IMG/VR virus record: IMGVR_UViG_3300029258_003221
Coordinates: 124,001 to 188,000 of that record
Direction: 5' to 3' (one strand)
DNA: 64,000 nt
Shown: positions 836 to 23,610 of the stretch, piece by piece
How positions within the stretch are numbered: position 1 is the stretch's first letter
How the letters are laid out: the number at the start of each line of letters is the position of its first letter
Position numbers and translations under genes: made by a program
The notes under the pieces: model-generated
What the model saw: only the letters and a program-made list of their open reading frames with translations
What the model was told of the DNA's origin: nothing
Databases searched by the model: none

Positions 836-2476
836 ATGAATTTAATTGAACTACTTTCGGTTGGAGGTGTACTTTACTTTACCAATCAGGCAATGAATTC
901 TTACTTTGCTTCTCGTGGCAAAAATATATCTAAACGTCCTGAATTTTCTGAAAGCCAAAAGAACGAATACCTACAAGCCATTGGCAGAAATCGACGACCG
1001 CTGACCGAAAAGGAAAAGAAGTCCCTCGACAATCTGAAAAGCATGTGGGAAAAAGAGATGAAGGATCATCTTGCTGCTCCCCAATACCCAACAACACAAT
1101 CATTCCAATTCCAACTCAGCTCAGAACATTTAACAGAGAAAATTAACGCCTTCAGAAATCGTTACAAGACCACTGAAAACTATACCCATGGCGTTCTTCC
1201 CGGCACTGTCGAAGAGAAGTGTTCTCCTTTTTCTCTAACCAGAGAAGAGAGAGACTCCGGGATCGTTGAAATCTGGAGGAACAAGGAAGGACAATACCAC
1301 CGAGAAGATGGTCCTGCGGTCATCTATGCCAGTGGAGCAGAAGAATGGTATTGGGAAGACAAATTCACACCCGGTCCTACAGAAAGACATGACAACAAAC
1401 TCGTCTGGAGAGACGACAAAGGCGATTGTCATCGAGAATATGGTCCCGCCATTCTCTACAAGAATGGGAAGAGAACTTGGTGCCAGAACGGTGAATTTCA
1501 TCGGGTAGATGGTCCTGCTATCATTCACAGAGATAGATCGGAAGAATGGTGGTGGGAAGGCACACGAACTCCTGCTCCAGAAACTAAAGATTCCGCTCTA
1601 GTTTGGAAAGACGCCAATGGTGATTATCACCGAAACCATGGACCTGCTATCATTTCCAAAGATGGAAATCTTAGATGGTATAAACACGGAAAACGCCATC
1701 GTGTGAATGGACCTGCTGTTGTTTACTCCAGTGGAATTGAATTTTGGTATTGGGAAGGCAATAAAACGCCTGCTCCCATTCGTGAAAATAATCGCTACAT
1801 TTGGGAAAATGAAAACGGTCAATTCCATCGTGAACATGGGCCTGCTATTGTTTACAACAATGGCAAATTAGTTTGGTATAAAAACAACAAACGTCATCGG
1901 GTAGATGGACCTGCTGTTATTTATGCCGATGGCGAAGAAAAATGGTATTGGGAAGGTAATCAAACCCCTACTCCTGTTCGTGAAGGTAATCGTTACGTCT
2001 GGAGAAGGGAAGATGGGCAATTACACCGTGAACATGGACCTGCAATTGTTTATGATAATGGTAGAGGAGTTTTTGATGATGGTAGAGGAGTTTGGTATAA
2101 ACACAATAAACGTCATCGGGTAGATGGCCCTGCTGTTGTTTGTGTCGATGGCACAGAACAATGGTACTGGGAAGGTAATCAAACCCCTGCTCCTGTTCGT
2201 GAAGATATTCGCTACGTCTGGAGAAATGAAATTGGTGAAGCCCATCGTGAACATGGCCCTGCCATTGTTTATGATGATGGCCGTATGTGCTGGTACAAAA
2301 ACAACAAACGTCATCGTGAAGATGGACCTGCCATTATATGTTCTGACGAAGAACCCAAATGGTATTTGAATGGAAAAGAGTATAGCGATCCCACCACAAC
2401 AGATGATGGCTTTATGTTGTGGAGAGACAAATCATTTGTTCCTATGTTTGTATCAAAACGAAGTGAGTTTGTTTAA
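836..2476 (+). CDS. HRxDGPA-repeat protein with N-terminal membrane anchor
   Basis: 546 aa; about 10 repeats of H-R-x-(D/H)-G-P-A-(V/I)...W-Y/W; hydrophobic N-terminus; repeat type common in large phages. Confidence 0.85.
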   Translation: MNLIELLSVGGVLYFTNQAMNSYFASRGKNISKRPEFSESQKNEYLQAIGRNRRPLTEKEKKSLDNLKSMWEKEMKDHLAAPQYPTTQSFQFQLSSEHLTEKINAFRNRYKTTENYTHGVLPGTVEEKCSPFSLTREERDSGIVEIWRNKEGQYHREDGPAVIYASGAEEWYWEDKFTPGPTERHDNKLVWRDDKGDCHREYGPAILYKNGKRTWCQNGEFHRVDGPAIIHRDRSEEWWWEGTRTPAPETKDSALVWKDANGDYHRNHGPAIISKDGNLRWYKHGKRHRVNGPAVVYSSGIEFWYWEGNKTPAPIRENNRYIWENENGQFHREHGPAIVYNNGKLVWYKNNKRHRVDGPAVIYADGEEKWYWEGNQTPTPVREGNRYVWRREDGQLHREHGPAIVYDNGRGVFDDGRGVWYKHNKRHRVDGPAVVCVDGTEQWYWEGNQTPAPVREDIRYVWRNEIGEAHREHGPAIVYDDGRMCWYKNNKRHREDGPAIICSDEEPKWYLNGKEYSDPTTTDDGFMLWRDKSFVPMFVSKRSEFV

Positions 2477-2526
2477 TTCACTTCCGGGCTCCGAACCAAA
2501 ATCACTTATTAAAGAATTGACACATA

Positions 2527-4302
2527 ATGTCCATTACTATCATTCAGGCAATCTCTGTTGCCGCCTTCATCTACTTTGCCCATCGTCTGATTAATCCAAA
2601 AACATCAGACGCAGAGCAAAGTGCAGCTCAAATAACTCAAGACAAAGAATCCGCAAAACAAAAATTACTCAATAGGTTTTATGCCAGTACCGGTTTGCCT
2701 ACTGTAGACGAAGAGCTACGACTACGAAAAAAGACATACAAAGATTATGATACGTTGATTTCAAATCAACAAAAAGAAATACTTGACAAAATCAATACAG
2801 CAACCAAAGAAGCTGCCGACCAAATTAAAGCCGATTCTATACTCAAATCAGGTATGAATGCTGAGGCAAATTCCACTAAATCAGAGAAAACAGATTGGAA
2901 CTGTGAAATCAAATCAGTCGCTGATGTGGATGATGTGTATGGATTTGTTAAAGCTGTCAATAGAAACATCTGCTCTACTTACGCTTCTACTTCGAATAAA
3001 GAAGGCAGCCATATTGTTTGGAGAAACAGTAAAGGACAAATCCATCGACTCGATGGCCCTGCATTTATCTATCGCAATGGTAGAGAAGAATGGTATTGGG
3101 AAGGAAGAAGAACTCCTGCCCCAGCATCAATCACAAGTGATACACTGATGTGGAAACACAATGGTGTTCCCCATCGAGATCATGGTCCCGCTATTGTTGA
3201 TTTTAAAAATGATAGCTTGACATGGTATTTTGATAGTAAGCCACACAGAGACACAGGCCCCGCCAGAACAGCCATCAGCAATTCTTTAAAGAATAATGAA
3301 TGGTATTGGAACGGTCATAAAACTCCTGAACCTCAGTTGGTTAAAGAAGCCAATCCTCAAAAACCCTATAGACGAATTTTGTTTTGGGTCAATGATGATT
3401 CTATTGTGCATCGAGAGCATGGCCCGGCAATCATTACAACACTGAATGATGGTCATCCCAAATATGAGTTCTTTAAAGACGGTCTTGAATATAAAAATGA
3501 TGCTGCTGAAGTAATCCCCAGTGCAGGCATAAGACAATTTCGTCCACCTTATGAACCTCCATTGAGAATGTCTCAGACAGGTAGTCGATACTGGAAAGAT
3601 GGATTCAAAGGATATCACAGACTATGTGGCCCAGCGATCATCTTCTTTGATGGGGAAGAACGATGGTACTGGGAAGGTGAACGAACCACTAATCCTGTTC
3701 GTGAAGACAATCGTCTTGTCTGGAAAGATGATGACGATCAAATTCATCGGAAATATGGACCTGCTGTGGTCTATCCCAATGGAGCACGTGAATATTGGCA
3801 GCACGGCCAAAAACAAACATCATACGGACTTTATGAAAGCCCTCTTGATCCCATTAAACACGATGAACAGATTGAAATTTCTCTAAATTGTTATCATTAT
3901 TACAAAAAGGGAAATCGTCATCGGTTGAATGGACCGGCTGTTATTGATAGTTACACAAAATGGTATTGGAAGGGTAAGCAATGTTGCGACCCAACTGATT
4001 GTGCTCCAGCCGAAGCTAAGGATGGGGCAATTTGGAACTATTTTTGGAAAACCTCAAGTGGAGATTTTCATCGATCTGATGGAGGTCCAGCCTTAGTTTG
4101 TCATTATGAAGATGGTCTTTATCTTGCTTGGTGGGTTTACGGGCAAAAACATCGATCTGATGGCCCAGCGATCATCAATCAAGATAATTCCATTGCCTTT
4201 TACTATCATGGCAAAGAAAAGACTTTGGATGAAATGATTGAACTTTTCCCTGATCAAAAAGAGGAATTACTGAAGTATCAGGGTTTGTCTATTTCTGTTT
4301 AA
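2527..4302 (+). CDS. HRxDGPA-repeat protein with N-terminal membrane anchor (paralog of upstream gene)
   Basis: 591 aa; about 9 more degenerate HRxxGPA repeats; N-terminal TM segment. Confidence 0.85.
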   Translation: MSITIIQAISVAAFIYFAHRLINPKTSDAEQSAAQITQDKESAKQKLLNRFYASTGLPTVDEELRLRKKTYKDYDTLISNQQKEILDKINTATKEAADQIKADSILKSGMNAEANSTKSEKTDWNCEIKSVADVDDVYGFVKAVNRNICSTYASTSNKEGSHIVWRNSKGQIHRLDGPAFIYRNGREEWYWEGRRTPAPASITSDTLMWKHNGVPHRDHGPAIVDFKNDSLTWYFDSKPHRDTGPARTAISNSLKNNEWYWNGHKTPEPQLVKEANPQKPYRRILFWVNDDSIVHREHGPAIITTLNDGHPKYEFFKDGLEYKNDAAEVIPSAGIRQFRPPYEPPLRMSQTGSRYWKDGFKGYHRLCGPAIIFFDGEERWYWEGERTTNPVREDNRLVWKDDDDQIHRKYGPAVVYPNGAREYWQHGQKQTSYGLYESPLDPIKHDEQIEISLNCYHYYKKGNRHRLNGPAVIDSYTKWYWKGKQCCDPTDCAPAEAKDGAIWNYFWKTSSGDFHRSDGGPALVCHYEDGLYLAWWVYGQKHRSDGPAIINQDNSIAFYYHGKEKTLDEMIELFPDQKEELLKYQGLSISV

Positions 4303-9957: not shown

Positions 9958-10365
9958 TTACTCAACCCGGTCGTGGACTGAGATTGGTGCAGTGTAGTTA
10001 ATGTCATCATGCACCATTGCATTAGTGGTGCTGATGTAGCTGCCACCAGCCATGACGTGTTTGCCATTGCGAATTGCTCCGACCCACTTGGCGGCATAGG
10101 GGTTATCGAGACTTGGCGGTCCTGATCGTGGCAGGCAGAGGATCAGACTGTCATTGGTCAGGAAGTGACAACCTTTGACAATCTCTCTCACCTGACCATA
10201 TCTGGGCAGATTTCCATCGACATAGACACGCCAGACATTGATTGAGTCTCTTCGGCGGGTGATGCCATCATTGGTGCAGTCGTGGTGATTGATCAGCACC
10301 GTCATTCGGTGAACATGGGCACTGCATCGTTGTGCAATTGTTGGATTGGTCGTGGCGATTGTCAT
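9958..10365 (-). CDS. hypothetical protein
   Basis: 135 aa, GGGGAGAG RBS; TAA-GACACCC. Confidence 0.75.
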   Translation of the reverse strand: MTIATTNPTIAQRCSAHVHRMTVLINHHDCTNDGITRRRDSINVWRVYVDGNLPRYGQVREIVKGCHFLTNDSLILCLPRSGPPSLDNPYAAKWVGAIRNGKHVMAGGSYISTTNAMVHDDINYTAPISVHDRVE

Positions 10366-10420
10366 TGTCTCTCCCCAGAGAAATGTTTTGTTGTTGATGG
10401 TTGGTTACTGGGTGTCAGAT

Positions 10421-10560
10421 TGGAGATGGAGGGACTCGAACCCTCGTCCAAACTTATCACGTTATCCCAAACACGAGCGAAACATGGGCCTTTTCTCGTT
10501 GTCGCCTACCCTATAGCGGCGACTGTTCAGCGTGATAGCCTGTCAATACCATTCATCCCC
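10421..10560 (-). ncRNA. miniature tmRNA-like RNA (tRNA-like domain only, 140 nt)
   Basis: 5' GGGGAUG-AAUGGUAUUGAC and 3' GGAC-GAGGG-UUCGAGU-CCCUC-CAUCUCC-A; acceptor stem with G3.U70 and A73; no D-stem; helix 2 present; no room for an MLD or pseudoknots. Confidence 0.8.
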
Positions 10561-10576
10561 GAAAGAGTTAACTGTG

Positions 10577-10652
10577 ACACGGCCACCACCACGTTGGCGC
10601 TCCTCGTGACCGTGCCCCCGGTTACTTAACGCCCTACCCTGCCACAACCGGG
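10577..10652 (-). ncRNA. candidate structured RNA (two hairpins with complementary loops)
   Basis: stems CCCGGUU/AACCGGG and GCACGGUCAC/GUGGCCGUGU; loops GGCGUU and AGCGCC can pair. Confidence 0.35.
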
Positions 10653-10713
10653 TGCATCAGGGATTCAGGCCTAGTTGACTTGCCTTTGCCAGAGGCTTAT
10701 TGGAGCGGCTTTG

Positions 10714-11178
10714 TTACGCTGTTACTGGGTGTCGGACAACACACTCAACACCGGCTTTGTCGCAGATGCCTTTGAGTAGTTCGAGCCAGTTTGGTTGTTT
10801 GTTGAAGATATCCCCGTCGATTCCGAAGATTACTTCTTTCCCATCGTTGTACTCTTCCGAACTTGATCGGATTGCGTAATTACGATCCACAATCCACATG
10901 TGTGGTGTTCGGCTTGACTTCGTTGCCAGTTTACCGGGTGTCCTCAGATAGCACATATGATCGTCACCGAACAAATGTGCATCACTAGAAACCTTGACAC
11001 GAGCCAGATTGAGCCCAATGCCCATTAGTCGTTGACGAATCAGATGCAGCAGGTGAATTTCAGCTCCCCAACCATGAACATGGCGGGTGTATCCACTTGC
11101 CGTAGCTTTTTGGTCGGTGTCCTCTTTCTGGACAACGAGTGTTCCTGAGTCTTTGAACAGATTGAACTTGATTTTCAT
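10714..11178 (-). CDS. hypothetical protein
   Basis: start moved to ATG with GGGGAGA RBS. Confidence 0.75.
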   Translation of the reverse strand: MKIKFNLFKDSGTLVVQKEDTDQKATASGYTRHVHGWGAEIHLLHLIRQRLMGIGLNLARVKVSSDAHLFGDDHMCYLRTPGKLATKSSRTPHMWIVDRNYAIRSSSEEYNDGKEVIFGIDGDIFNKQPNWLELLKGICDKAGVECVVRHPVTA

Positions 11179-22955: not shown

Positions 22956-23154
22956 CAATAAAACCCTTGTTCGGTGATGCAGGAGAGACTTGAACTCCCA
23001 TTTCAGCAAACCTTCAACATACTTTTCCCGTGTCTCTCGGGCCTTTCTGCCAAAGGAGACATATTTGCTGAACTCTACCTGACTGCACCATGTGTTTCAA
23101 AATGAGGGACAAGCAACACACTCATCCCCCGTGGGACTTCCTCTCTGTCTTTTC

Positions 23155-23610
23155 TTACTGGGTGTCCACTTTGGGAACCAATGGCAATCTGTCGCCTTCA
23201 CCAAACATATATTCCTCTGGATCATCCTTGAAACGAACTACGCACTCGTAATATGACTTCGAGTGGTCCTCAAAGACAGATTCAACTGTCTTCTCATGAC
23301 AAATCGTGTCAGTTTCATATATCACGGTGTCACCTTTATTCAAATCACAAGGCTCAACCGTAAATGTCTCTGGAATATCCGTTTCCCGACTAACAGCTCC
23401 CATGATGGCACCCATCACAGTCAATGGTTCTTCTGCCCATTCAGAAGCTTCCCACATAACCATCTCAAAACCGTTTGAGTCCACCAACCGAACATATTCA
23501 CATTCAGCCGGATAAGCAGGACAAACCAGTCGGAGACCATTAGGAAGCAAAACACTGCATTCCTTCTCTCGATCAATCGGTCCATACTGCGGGTTAAATG
23601 GCCCCATCAA
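23155..23610 (-). CDS. hypothetical protein
   Basis: 151 aa, AGGAG RBS. Confidence 0.7.
   Translation of the reverse strand: MMGPFNPQYGPIDREKECSVLLPNGLRLVCPAYPAECEYVRLVDSNGFEMVMWEASEWAEEPLTVMGAIMGAVSRETDIPETFTVEPCDLNKGDTVIYETDTICHEKTVESVFEDHSKSYYECVVRFKDDPEEYMFGEGDRLPLVPKVDTQ

What the first reader, a model, noticed from the sequence alone, without database searches (positions are those of the whole stretch)
10421..10560. Miniature 140-nt tmRNA-like gene lacking the mRNA-like domain
Seen (- strand): GGGGAUG AAUGGUAUUGAC AGGCU AUCACG CUGAACA [GUCGCC..GGCGAC] AA [CGAG..CUCG] UGUUUGG GAUAA CGUGAU A AGUUU GGAC GAGGG UUCGAGU CCCUC CAUCUCC A. It has the hallmarks of the tmRNA tRNA-like domain: a 7-bp acceptor stem with G3.U70 and discriminator A (alanine identity), a stemless D-loop ending in GAC, helix 2, the GGAC linker and a canonical T-arm. 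CCA is not encoded. The roughly 250 nt of pseudoknots and tag reading frame found in bacterial tmRNA is replaced by two small hairpins (loops contain GGG and CCC and may kiss). The MLD-less tmRNAs I know of are mitochondrial (e.g. jakobids). Inference: a decoy that titrates SmpB, AlaRS or EF-Tu, blocks or short-circuits trans-translation, or soaks up tRNA/tmRNA-cleaving defence nucleases.
Basis: partly seen in the sequence, partly recalled or inferred. Interest (0 to 1): 0.9.

Follow-up and report, generated by a model that had tools for sequence, protein, structure and literature searches.

The report
Compact tag-less tmRNA in jumbo phage
A marine jumbo phage carries a conserved 140-nt copy of only the tRNA-like end of the bacterial ribosome-rescue RNA (tmRNA) with no protein-tag message; it probably competes with the host's tmRNA, and it belongs to a wider, so far undescribed family of such phage RNAs.

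Summary
Window 10421-10560 (-) is a 140-nt gene called by ARAGORN and by Rfam tmRNA (53.7 bits, gathering score 47). It has a complete alanine-type tRNA-like domain (TLD), and 78 nt (extended P2 stem, two hairpins) replace about 308 model positions.

It is a selected RNA gene, not debris. Three orthologues lie in distantly related phages whose neighbouring proteins are 31-71% identical. For the one checked (L088), the RNA is 82% identical, with similarity starting at G1 and ending at the discriminator. All helices covary. No reading frame or stop codon is conserved, so ARAGORN's tag is an artefact.

About 40 further compact (113-144 nt) genes occur in unrelated viral and metagenomic contigs. 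Most share a hairpin whose loop begins GA(A/U)AA-GCC.

Tag-less tmRNAs are not only mitochondrial. Mycobacteriophage DS6A has an ~80-nt TLD-only form, reported to inhibit E. coli tmRNA. This is therefore a new, structurally richer variant of a known kind.

Most likely mechanism (inferred): it is alanylated, binds host SmpB and competes with host tmRNA. Expression and binding could not be tested.

A second, Rfam-invisible 115-nt TLD-like gene without alanine identity lies at 22975-23089 (-).

The parts
10421..10560 (-). Compact CDS-less tmRNA gene (140 nt): tRNA-like domain + extended P2 + two hairpins; no encoded CCA
   Evidence: ARAGORN; Rfam RF00023 at 53.7 bits, above the gathering score of 47; fold; orthologues and covariation
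10554..10560 (-). Acceptor stem 5' strand GGGGAUG, pairing with 10422-10428 (CAUCUCC). G3.U70 and discriminator A (10421) give alanine identity.
   Evidence: Invariant in the 4 orthologues. Also present in L324 and L379, which were found without constraining the acceptor sequence.
10543..10553 (-). Stemless D-loop analogue (AAUGGUAUUGA), matching the tmRNA consensus GG..U.GAC
   Evidence: Rfam alignment
10449..10542 (-). P2 rod. P2a is 10531-10542 with 10449-10461 (one bulged A). P2b is 10525-10530 with 10467-10472. Internal loop GAUAA lies at 10462-10466.
   Evidence: 6 pairs with compensatory changes among the orthologues
10501..10523 (-). Hairpin 1 (stem GUCGCC/GGCGAC), with the loop ending in the conserved GGUA
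   Evidence: All 4 stem pairs scored in the 7-member subfamily covary. Orthologue stems are GCCACC/GGUGGC, GUCACC/GGUGAC and GUUCUC/GAGGAC.
10473..10499 (-). Motif hairpin (stem ACGAG/CUCGU). The loop begins with GAAAAGGCCC (10486-10495), which is invariant in the 4 orthologues.
   Evidence: an A-rich + GCC loop recurs in most unrelated compact genes
10429..10445 (-). T-arm GAGGG-UUCGAGU-CCCUC, preceded by the tmRNA-specific GGAC
10561..10721 (-). 161-nt leader between the upstream motif copy and the RNA 5' end; it appears unconstrained
   Evidence: Fold z +0.59; 4 substitutions and a 25-nt indel in strain variants; not alignable with L088
10722..10733 (-). Copy of the repeated signal GACACCCAGTAA upstream of the RNA gene (putative phage promoter or 5'-end signal)
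   Evidence: 22 copies, all on the - strand, against 0.24 expected; each followed by a CA-rich leader, SD and ATG
10405..10416 (-). Copy of the same signal 4 nt after the RNA 3' end, heading the next gene (ATG at 10365)
   Evidence: The same arrangement is seen 7-8 nt after the L088 and L386 orthologues.
22975..23089 (-). Second, divergent TLD-like gene (115 nt). Acceptor GGUGCAG/CUGCAUC has G2.U71 and U3-A70, so no alanine identity. T-arm is GGGAG-UUCAAGU-CUCUC. It has a 9-10 bp P2 rod and shares the 8-mer AAAGGCCC with element 1.
   Evidence: Model R1 at 20.4 bits, E 0.004; structural descriptor; fold -37.4 kcal/mol, z -2.5; alignment; no ARAGORN or Rfam hit

Best explanation
This is a phage-encoded, tag-less, miniaturised tmRNA. 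It keeps everything needed to be handled like tmRNA's tRNA-like end: acceptor stem with G3.U70 and A73 for AlaRS, T-arm, the D-loop/GAC...GGAC elbow that SmpB recognises, and the start of helix 2. It has no terminated reading frame. I infer the following pathway. It is transcribed as its own unit in the phage's array of small (probably early) genes. It is trimmed by RNase P and a 3' endonuclease, and host CCA-adding enzyme adds CCA. It is then charged with alanine and bound by host SmpB (and EF-Tu). In that form it competes with host tmRNA for SmpB and for stalled ribosomes. The result would be that proteolysis tagging by trans-translation is suppressed or short-circuited during infection, so it acts as a dominant-negative tmRNA mimic. 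What is shown: the gene, its structure, purifying selection on it, and the absence of a conserved tag frame. What is inferred: expression, maturation, charging, SmpB binding and the effect on the host. The conserved middle module (GGUA ... GAAAAGGCCC hairpin) has no assigned partner. I suspect it is a vestige of the PK1/resume region that strengthens SmpB or ribosome engagement.
For: Identity as a tmRNA TLD. Selection on the RNA: (a) 7-member subfamily, 87.9% of cells paired against 66% in shuffles, 0/500 shuffles reach the observed value on all five measures, slid controls 42-53%. (b) 4 syntenic orthologues on a structure-blind alignment, 91.5% paired, 10 compensatory pairs, 0-2/500. (c) L088: RNA 82% identical, flanks 33-36%, similarity bounded exactly by G1 and the discriminator, while neighbouring proteins are 31-68% identical. 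(d) A strain variant has 24 substitutions in 1.4 kb and none in 10318-10582 (P about 0.08 for the gene alone). No tag: the GCC frame has no stop before the 3' end in 17 of 26 members and the other frames are similar. The orthologues differ in frame and stop, and ARAGORN calls only 2 of the 4. Charging matters: G3.U70 and A73 are invariant in the orthologues and present in L324 and L379, which were found without constraining the acceptor. Precedent: the DS6A TLD-only RNA is reported to inhibit endogenous tmRNA in E. coli, perhaps by titrating SmpB (PMC4131195 and PMC11915505, both citing Mao et al. 2009). Host mimicry: co-occurring canonical tmRNAs share the last 33 nt with 0-3 mismatches and also lack encoded CCA. 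Transcription-unit context.
Against: There is no expression evidence: no RNA run was listed, and no sigma-70 promoter or terminator was found for it. There are no biochemical data on alanylation or SmpB binding. The DS6A result is known to me only through two secondary citations; the primary paper is not held. If SmpB titration were the whole story, an ~80-nt DS6A-like RNA would suffice, so the conserved 78-nt middle points to additional or different function. The gene is absent from the fetched stretches of about half of the sampled relatives, including the closest, so it is accessory. The host is unknown. No SmpB or other translation gene is seen in the 64 kb.
Confidence: 0.5

Rival explanations
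1. Tag-free ribosome rescuer. The charged RNA with SmpB enters stalled ribosomes and accepts the nascent chain, which is then released without a degradation tag (by ArfB-like hydrolysis or drop-off). This recycles ribosomes for the phage while sparing truncated phage proteins. The same role has been proposed for the CDS-less mitochondrial tmRNAs.
For: Alanine identity is strictly conserved, which matters only if the RNA is charged. The conserved A-rich + GCC loop resembles the region around the resume codon of canonical tmRNAs. Mitochondrial CDS-less tmRNAs are thought to free ribosomes (PMC3590771, PMC11915505). In other phages the compact gene lies near tRNA clusters.
Against: In the window lineage the motif departs from the canonical resume context at the three most constrained neighbouring positions: -5 is A (0% in 153 tmRNAs), -1 is G (0%) and +4 is C (2%). 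No release mechanism is evident and no stop codon is conserved. The only experimental datum for a phage TLD-only RNA is inhibition, not rescue (PMC11915505).
Confidence: 0.22
2. Decoy or sponge for something other than SmpB. Candidates are a host RNase or defence nuclease that recognises tRNA/tmRNA acceptor-T modules (for example RNase R), or a partner RNA for a phage protein. The window's second TLD-like RNA would then be a sibling decoy.
For: Two different anticodon-less TLD RNAs lie in one phage. Relatives carry other odd long tRNA-like genes. t(m)RNA fragments bound to a phage Acr protein associate with RNase R (PMC11662646). The conserved middle module has no assigned partner.
Against: There is no adjacent conserved protein partner: the flanking ORFs are not conserved with the RNA. 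The tmRNA-specific elbow motifs (GAC/GGAC) and alanine identity are retained, which a generic nuclease decoy would not need. No defence-related gene context was found.
Confidence: 0.13
3. A genuine minimal tmRNA that still encodes a short tag: either ARAGORN's DNEKRPMFRSCLG, or a frame starting at GCC.
For: ARAGORN reports a tag. PK2-4 are dispensable and PK1 is replaceable by a hairpin in canonical tmRNA (established knowledge from memory, not tested here). A few unrelated compact genes have GCC-UAG or GCA-NNN-stop.
Against: A 1-nt indel between the motif and the UAA shifts the frame between window and L088. L386 and L088 have no stop in the GCC frame, and L387 stops at codon 3. ARAGORN fails to call L386 and L387. 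Stop-codon presence does not differ between the three frames (17, 14 and 11 of 26 without a stop).
Confidence: 0.04
4. Non-functional remnant: a decaying phage-borne ssrA, an attP fragment of host ssrA, or one half of a two-piece tmRNA.
For: The 3' 33 nt are identical to co-occurring bacterial tmRNAs, as would be expected of an att core. Phages often integrate at ssrA (PMC9004378, PMC11915505).
Against: The full 5' half is present and pairs. There is covariation in every helix. Conservation exceeds that of the neighbouring proteins. No integrase family appears among 101 ORFs. There is no permuted or coding piece in the 64 kb. Dozens of independent compact genes share the same plan.
Confidence: 0.03

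Closest known systems
TLD-only (CDS-less) tmRNA of mycobacteriophage DS6A
   Same: It is phage-encoded, has a complete tmRNA tRNA-like domain with alanine identity, and has no tag reading frame. Rfam tmRNA matches both ends with the middle deleted (DS6A: L262:28478-28560, 43.2 bits). It is reported to inhibit endogenous tmRNA (PMC4131195, PMC11915505).
   Different: DS6A's RNA is about 80 nt with only a 20-nt cap on P2, and it scores below Rfam's gathering score. The window RNA is 140 nt. Its conserved 78-nt middle comprises an extended P2, two covarying hairpins, and invariant GGUA and GAAAAGGCCC motifs. It scores above the gathering score. The host phylum, phage type (temperate siphovirus against marine jumbo phage) and sequence are all unrelated.
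Mitochondrial (jakobid, oomycete) and plastid CDS-less tmRNAs (Rfam RF02544 and relatives)
   Same: The mRNA-like domain and pseudoknots are lost, while the alanine-type TLD is retained. CCA is added post-transcriptionally (PMC3590771, PMC11915505).
   Different: Those forms are organellar, mostly circularly permuted two-piece genes, and much shorter, with no conserved inserted module. The present gene is one-piece, viral and carries a conserved middle.
Canonical one-piece bacterial tmRNA (Rfam RF00023)
   Same: The TLD sequence and structure match the consensus at essentially every conserved position. The score is above the gathering threshold. The A-rich run followed by GCC is reminiscent of the PK1-to-resume-codon region.
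   Different: There are no PK1-PK4 pseudoknots, no helix 5, and no conserved resume context or terminated tag frame. The length is 140 nt against about 350-370 nt.
Full-length phage tmRNAs (Bxz1-like mycobacteriophages, phage G, pelagimyophages/Melnitz, huge phages)
   Same: They are phage-borne ssrA-derived genes, often placed near early promoters or tRNA clusters (PMC9004378, PMC7162821, PMC4131195).
   Different: Those forms retain a tag CDS and pseudoknots and are presumed to perform trans-translation. This one cannot tag.

Membership tests
tmRNA (Rfam RF00023), tRNA-like domain | 7-bp acceptor stem with G3.U70, discriminator A, T-arm with a UUCRANY loop, stemless D-loop with GG...GAC, and GGAC before the T-arm | tested here: met
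   The Rfam score of 53.7 exceeds the gathering score of 47.
tmRNA (canonical, functional definition) | An mRNA-like domain: a resume codon in conserved context followed by a short tag frame ending in a stop codon | tested here: not met
   No frame or stop is conserved among the 4 orthologues or 26 family members. Positions -5, -1 and +4 are non-canonical.
tmRNA (canonical) | Pseudoknots PK1-PK4 and helix 5 | tested here: not met
   78 nt replace 308 model positions. Only two simple hairpins are present. A 3-4 bp PK1-like loop contact (GGGU:GCCC) is possible but shows no covariation.
tmRNA (canonical) | Alanylation by AlaRS and binding by SmpB and EF-Tu | not testable with these tools
   Only the sequence determinants can be read, and they are present and conserved.
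CDS-less / TLD-only tmRNA (DS6A-type) | tmRNA TLD present, tag CDS absent, encoded by a phage | tested here: met
   The source contig is an IMG/VR UViG of 234,631 bp. PHROG hits and a small-gene array fit a phage.
CDS-less / TLD-only tmRNA (DS6A-type) | 'Little more than the TLD' (about 65-83 nt) | tested here: not met
   The gene is 140 nt with a conserved, covarying 78-nt middle, against a 20-nt cap in DS6A.
CDS-less / TLD-only tmRNA (DS6A-type) | Inhibits endogenous tmRNA when expressed | not testable with these tools
   This is known only for DS6A, through secondary citations (PMC4131195, PMC11915505).
Two-piece / permuted tmRNA | Circularly permuted gene order, or a separate coding piece | tested here: not met
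   RF04321 scores 16 bits against a gathering score of 47. There is no other tmRNA-family hit in the 64 kb at E <= 0.1. Gene order is 5' TLD half, middle, 3' TLD half.
attP / ssrA 3' fragment of an integrating element | Only the 3' part of ssrA is present, next to an integrase | tested here: not met
   The 5' half is present and pairs. No integrase family appears among 101 ORFs. Covariation is seen across phages.
Ordinary tRNA | Cloverleaf with D-arm and anticodon arm | tested here: not met
   ARAGORN finds no tRNA in the window, even with introns allowed. The fold has neither a D-stem nor an anticodon arm.

The most novel reading that the evidence does not exclude
Compact (113-144 nt) tag-less tmRNA derivatives form a widespread, previously undescribed phage RNA family. 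Their conserved middle module (GGUA ... GA(A/U)AA-GCC hairpin, a vestige of PK1 and the resume region) actively engages SmpB's second site or the ribosomal decoding centre. The RNA would then be an evolved ribosome- and SmpB-directed effector rather than a passive sponge. This phage lineage would additionally deploy anticodon-less TLD RNAs of other identities (element 2), that is, a toolkit of tRNA-end mimics.
Probability: 0.25. Interest if true: 0.8.

Novelty: new variant of a known kind. Interest (0 to 1): 0.6.

Why it matters
Trans-translation is the main ribosome-rescue pathway in nearly all bacteria and is an antibiotic target. Only one phage RNA (DS6A) has been reported to interfere with it. 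This analysis shows that structurally richer, strongly conserved tag-less tmRNA mimics recur in many uncultured phages, including a marine jumbo phage lineage. That suggests manipulation of ribosome rescue is a common phage strategy. It also provides natural minimal tmRNA scaffolds, each with a conserved module of unknown partner. These could be used to dissect SmpB and ribosome recognition or to inhibit trans-translation. A practical point follows for annotation: ARAGORN calls these genes only when a chance ORF exists (2 of the 4 orthologues) and then prints a spurious tag, so current phage annotations both miss and mis-describe them.

Tried and rejected
- **Database searches for the locus.** Megablast and blastn of the locus against INPHARED phages and PLSDB plasmids gave no match.
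- **Flanking proteins as handles for relatives in IMG/VR.** They returned only the same two contigs.
- **Conserved tag ORF.** Rejected by frame and stop statistics and by comparing the orthologues. An SD+AUG mini-ORF (MFRSCLG in the window, MCCPCLG in L386) is also rejected, because L088 and L387 lack the AUG or the frame.
- **Antisense protein gene explaining the conservation.** Rejected: the antisense ORFs of window and L088 are not similar (E 0.14).
- **Structured or functional upstream leader.** Rejected (z +0.59; variable between strains).
- **Sigma-70 promoter or intrinsic terminator for the gene.** None found.
- **RNA-seq evidence.** No RNA run was listed.
- **Companion TLD genes in other compact-tmRNA loci.** None were convincing. 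The second hit in L324 is two ordinary tRNAs.
- **Counterpart of element 2 in relatives.** None found by blastn-short or by the descriptor.
- **Loose 8-mer + T-loop scan of viral contigs.** Mostly chance hits; only L324 (and the distinct L379) survived filtering.
- **Kink-turn reading of the CGGUA/GAAA internal loop in other members.** It does not fit by eye; a loop-E-like reading is only a resemblance from memory.
- **Primary DS6A paper (Mao et al. 2009).** Not held.

Full report
**1.
ARAGORN calls a tmRNA at precisely these coordinates. Rfam's tmRNA model RF00023 matches it end to end at 53.7 bits (gathering score 47, E 2.7e-18). Both halves of the tRNA-like domain (TLD) align to the consensus, and 78 nt stand where the model has 308 positions.

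The minimum-free-energy fold (-49.5 kcal/mol, z -2.5) gives these elements:
- a 7-bp acceptor stem with G3.U70 and discriminator A
- an 11-nt stemless D-loop analogue
- a two-part P2 rod with a GAUAA internal loop
- two hairpins
- GGAC plus a canonical T-arm

CCA is not encoded. A purely structural descriptor finds this gene and one other in the window, and none in 30 shuffled windows.

**2. Source and context.**
Identical copies lie on two IMG/VR viral contigs. One of them, at 234,631 bp, is evidently the source genome, a jumbo phage. The same sequence occurs in marine sediment and seawater metagenomes.

The window is an array of roughly 100 small genes, nearly all on the minus strand. Only 8 Pfam families are recognised (DUF932, a ParB-like HTH, a GNAT, DUF6745 and a few others). 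No SmpB, integrase or translation gene is among them.

A 12-nt signal, GACACCC-N-GTAA, occurs 22 times, always on the minus strand, against 0.24 expected by chance. Each copy is followed by a CA-rich leader of about 30 nt, a Shine-Dalgarno sequence and an ATG, and some copies follow terminator hairpins. I read it as a phage-specific promoter or 5'-end signal.

The RNA gene sits as its own unit between two copies. One is 161 nt upstream, and one lies 4 nt past the RNA's 3' end and heads the next gene. The leader is not structured and varies between strains.

**3. It is a selected RNA gene, not debris.**
A gapped-pattern scan for 'TLD 5' half, 65-95 nt, TLD 3' half' was run over viral, metagenome and genome collections (the latter two were truncated at 120 rows). 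I then filtered for a true 7-bp acceptor stem and the absence of an overlapping full-length tmRNA. This left about 40 compact (113-144 nt) genes.

Six of them share the window's exact plan. On a MAFFT alignment of the seven, RNAalifold predicts 31 pairs, 19 of them with compensatory changes. Of all cells, 87.9% are paired, against 66% in shuffles; 0 of 500 shuffles reach the observed value on any of the five measures, and slid controls give 42-53%.

One of the six, L088, comes from a distant relative of this phage:
- Syntenic proteins are only 31-68% identical, and L088 has its own version of the repeated signal.
- The RNA is 82% identical while its flanks are unalignable (33-36%).
- Similarity begins at G1 and ends at the discriminator.
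- Antisense ORFs overlap the RNA in both phages, but they are not similar as proteins.

Using the best-conserved neighbouring protein, I fetched more relatives. The covariance model found two further orthologues that were not used to build it: L386 (140 nt, 101 bits) and L387 (143 nt, 71 bits). On a structure-blind alignment of the four orthologues, 91.5% of cells pair and 10 pairs show compensatory changes (0-2 of 500 shuffles; slid controls 40-52%). The acceptor stem, including G3.U70, is invariant.

A strain variant recovered from a seawater run differs at 24 positions plus a 25-nt insertion across 1.4 kb. None of these differences falls in 10318-10582, which contains the whole gene. For the gene alone this is only suggestive (P about 0.08).

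The gene is accessory. It is absent from the fetched stretches of the closest relative and of four more distant ones.

**4. There is no tag.**
- ARAGORN's peptide lies in a frame that a 1-nt indel breaks in L088.
- Starting from the conserved GCC, the window reads 10 codons to a UGA inside P2, L386 and L088 have no stop at all, and L387 stops at codon 3.
- Across 26 non-redundant compact genes, the GCC frame has no stop before the 3' end in 17, against 14 and 11 for the other two frames.
- ARAGORN calls only two of the four orthologues, so its call depends on a chance ORF.
- No permuted or separate coding piece exists in the 64 kb.

**5. What the middle is.**
Folding only the middle of each compact gene shows a recurrent plan. 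A P2 stem encloses a 'motif hairpin' (a 4-6 bp stem and a 17-22 nt loop beginning GA(A/U)AA-N-GCC) plus one accessory hairpin, placed before or after it.

In the four orthologues, GAAAAGGCCC at the start of that loop and GGUA at the 3' end of the hairpin-1 loop are invariant.

From 153 full-length tmRNAs that the scans fetched incidentally, the canonical resume region is an A-rich run, then U(-5) A(-4, 99%) A(-3) N U(-1), then GCC AAC. Some compact genes fit this well (L093 AUAAAC|GCC; L016 AUAACU|GCC). The window lineage does not fit at -5 (A), -1 (G) or +4 (C).

I therefore regard the module as a probable vestige of the PK1-to-resume region that has been kept for an RNA-level role. That is inference. 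It is retained as GGU:GCC in L088 and L387 but shows no covariation, so it remains open.

**6. Comparison with what is known.**
The tmRNA database papers also list other cases:
[quoted passage not shown] - ~65-bp plastid forms

These come from PMC4131195 and PMC11915505, both citing Mao et al. 2009, which I could not read.

I located the DS6A gene. It is about 80 nt with a 20-nt cap, and it scores 43.2 bits, below Rfam's gathering score. Full-length phage tmRNAs are also known (PMC7162821, PMC9004378). I found no description of 115-140-nt phage forms with a conserved middle module. The window gene is thus a new, richer variant of a known kind.

**7. Mechanism.**
The best-supported reading is a dominant-negative tmRNA mimic. 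It would be matured by RNase P, a 3' endonuclease and CCA-adding enzyme. It would then be charged by AlaRS, bound by host SmpB, and compete with host tmRNA for SmpB and stalled ribosomes.

Points in its favour:
- The TLD is intact.
- The DS6A precedent exists.
- Alanine identity is strictly conserved, even in L324 and L379, which were found without constraining the acceptor sequence. This suggests that charging, and hence ribosome entry, matters.
- Co-occurring canonical tmRNAs share the last 33 nt with 0-3 mismatches and likewise lack encoded CCA, which fits mimicry of the host's own tmRNA.

Points against, or still open:
- There is no expression or biochemical evidence.
- The conserved middle is unnecessary for a mere SmpB sponge.

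Rivals, in order of my confidence, are:
- tag-free rescue, as proposed for mitochondria
- a decoy for another partner, such as RNase R or a defence nuclease
- a real mini-tag (largely refuted)
- a remnant or att fragment (contradicted)

**8. Seen in passing.**
The covariance model gave a weak hit (20.4 bits) at 22975-23089 (-). It proves to be a second TLD-like gene of 115 nt with these features:
- a 7-bp acceptor stem, GGUGCAG/CUGCAUC
- a canonical T-arm
- a 9-10 bp P2 rod
- an A-rich internal loop
- the same AAAGGCCC 8-mer as element 1

It has G2.U71 and U3-A70 rather than G3.U70, it lacks the GAC/GGAC elbow motifs, and neither ARAGORN nor Rfam detects it. No counterpart was found elsewhere, so it rests on a single sequence.

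Relatives of the phage carry other unusual long tRNA-like genes.

**Verdict.**
This is a new variant of a known kind, with moderate to high interest.

Noticed in passing
window 22975-23089 (-): A second, divergent TLD-like RNA gene (115 nt). It has a 7-bp acceptor stem without G3.U70 (G2.U71 instead), a canonical T-arm, a 9-10 bp P2 rod, and an A-rich internal loop with the same AAAGGCCC 8-mer as the compact tmRNA. ARAGORN and Rfam do not detect it. It sits 66 nt downstream of a copy of the repeated signal. No homologue was found elsewhere.
   Followed up: partly
window 6467-46212, 22 sites on the - strand (e.g. 10405-10416, 10722-10733, 23155-23166): The repeated 12-mer GACACCC-N-GTAA (0.24 copies expected by chance) is followed by a CA-rich leader, SD and ATG, and some copies follow terminator hairpins. 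It is probably a lineage-specific promoter or 5'-end signal. Related phages carry GACACC-NNN-TAR in the same strand-specific way, with 39 copies in 20 kb of L386.
   Followed up: partly
L386:9769-9941 (+): With introns allowed, ARAGORN calls a tRNA-Lys(CUU)-like gene with a 96-nt insertion in the anticodon loop. It has one acceptor mismatch and sits between two copies of the repeated signal, about 900 nt upstream of that phage's compact tmRNA.
   Followed up: no
L388:7426-7537 and L388:17105-17216 (+): Two paralogous 112-nt tRNA-like genes with a long conserved insert, in a more distant relative. The same locus also has a suppressor-type tRNA (anticodon UUA) and an IS605-family TnpB.
   Followed up: no
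L222, L003, L058, L110, L135, L056 (compact tmRNA genes from other contigs): A subclass encloses the motif hairpin in an outer stem through a conserved asymmetric internal loop, CGGUA / GAAA. By eye this resembles a loop-E / bulged-G motif. These members mostly encode CCA, unlike the window subclass, none of which does.
   Followed up: no
window 10421-10453, contigs from runs X6, X9, X11, X13: Many short contigs from the same samples match only the last 33 nt of the RNA (0-3 mismatches). They then continue as canonical tmRNA sequence (...UAAGCAUGUAGAAAG...) with AT-rich flanks and no encoded CCA. They are candidate host tmRNAs whose TLD the phage copy mimics.
   Followed up: partly
window 10669: A 25-nt insertion/deletion polymorphism in the leader upstream of the RNA gene. 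The insertion is present in the second IMG/VR contig and in two seawater runs.
   Followed up: yes
L262 (phage DS6A) 49300-50502; L390 6606-7325 and 14128-15351: DS6A, the known carrier of a TLD-only tmRNA, also encodes an RtcB-like RNA ligase. A distant relative of the window phage encodes two RNA ligases (Rnl families) near tRNA genes. This may link tRNA-end mimics and tRNA repair in these phages.
   Followed up: no
window 836-4302 (+): Two large adjacent plus-strand proteins (546 and 591 aa) each carry a DUF6745 match. They are the only sizeable plus-strand genes next to the minus-strand small-gene array.
   Followed up: no
L379:8268-8401 (+): Another compact alanine-type TLD gene (134 nt; acceptor GGGCCGC with G3.U70; CCA encoded) whose middle is unrelated to the motif-hairpin family. 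This suggests independent miniaturisations.
   Followed up: no
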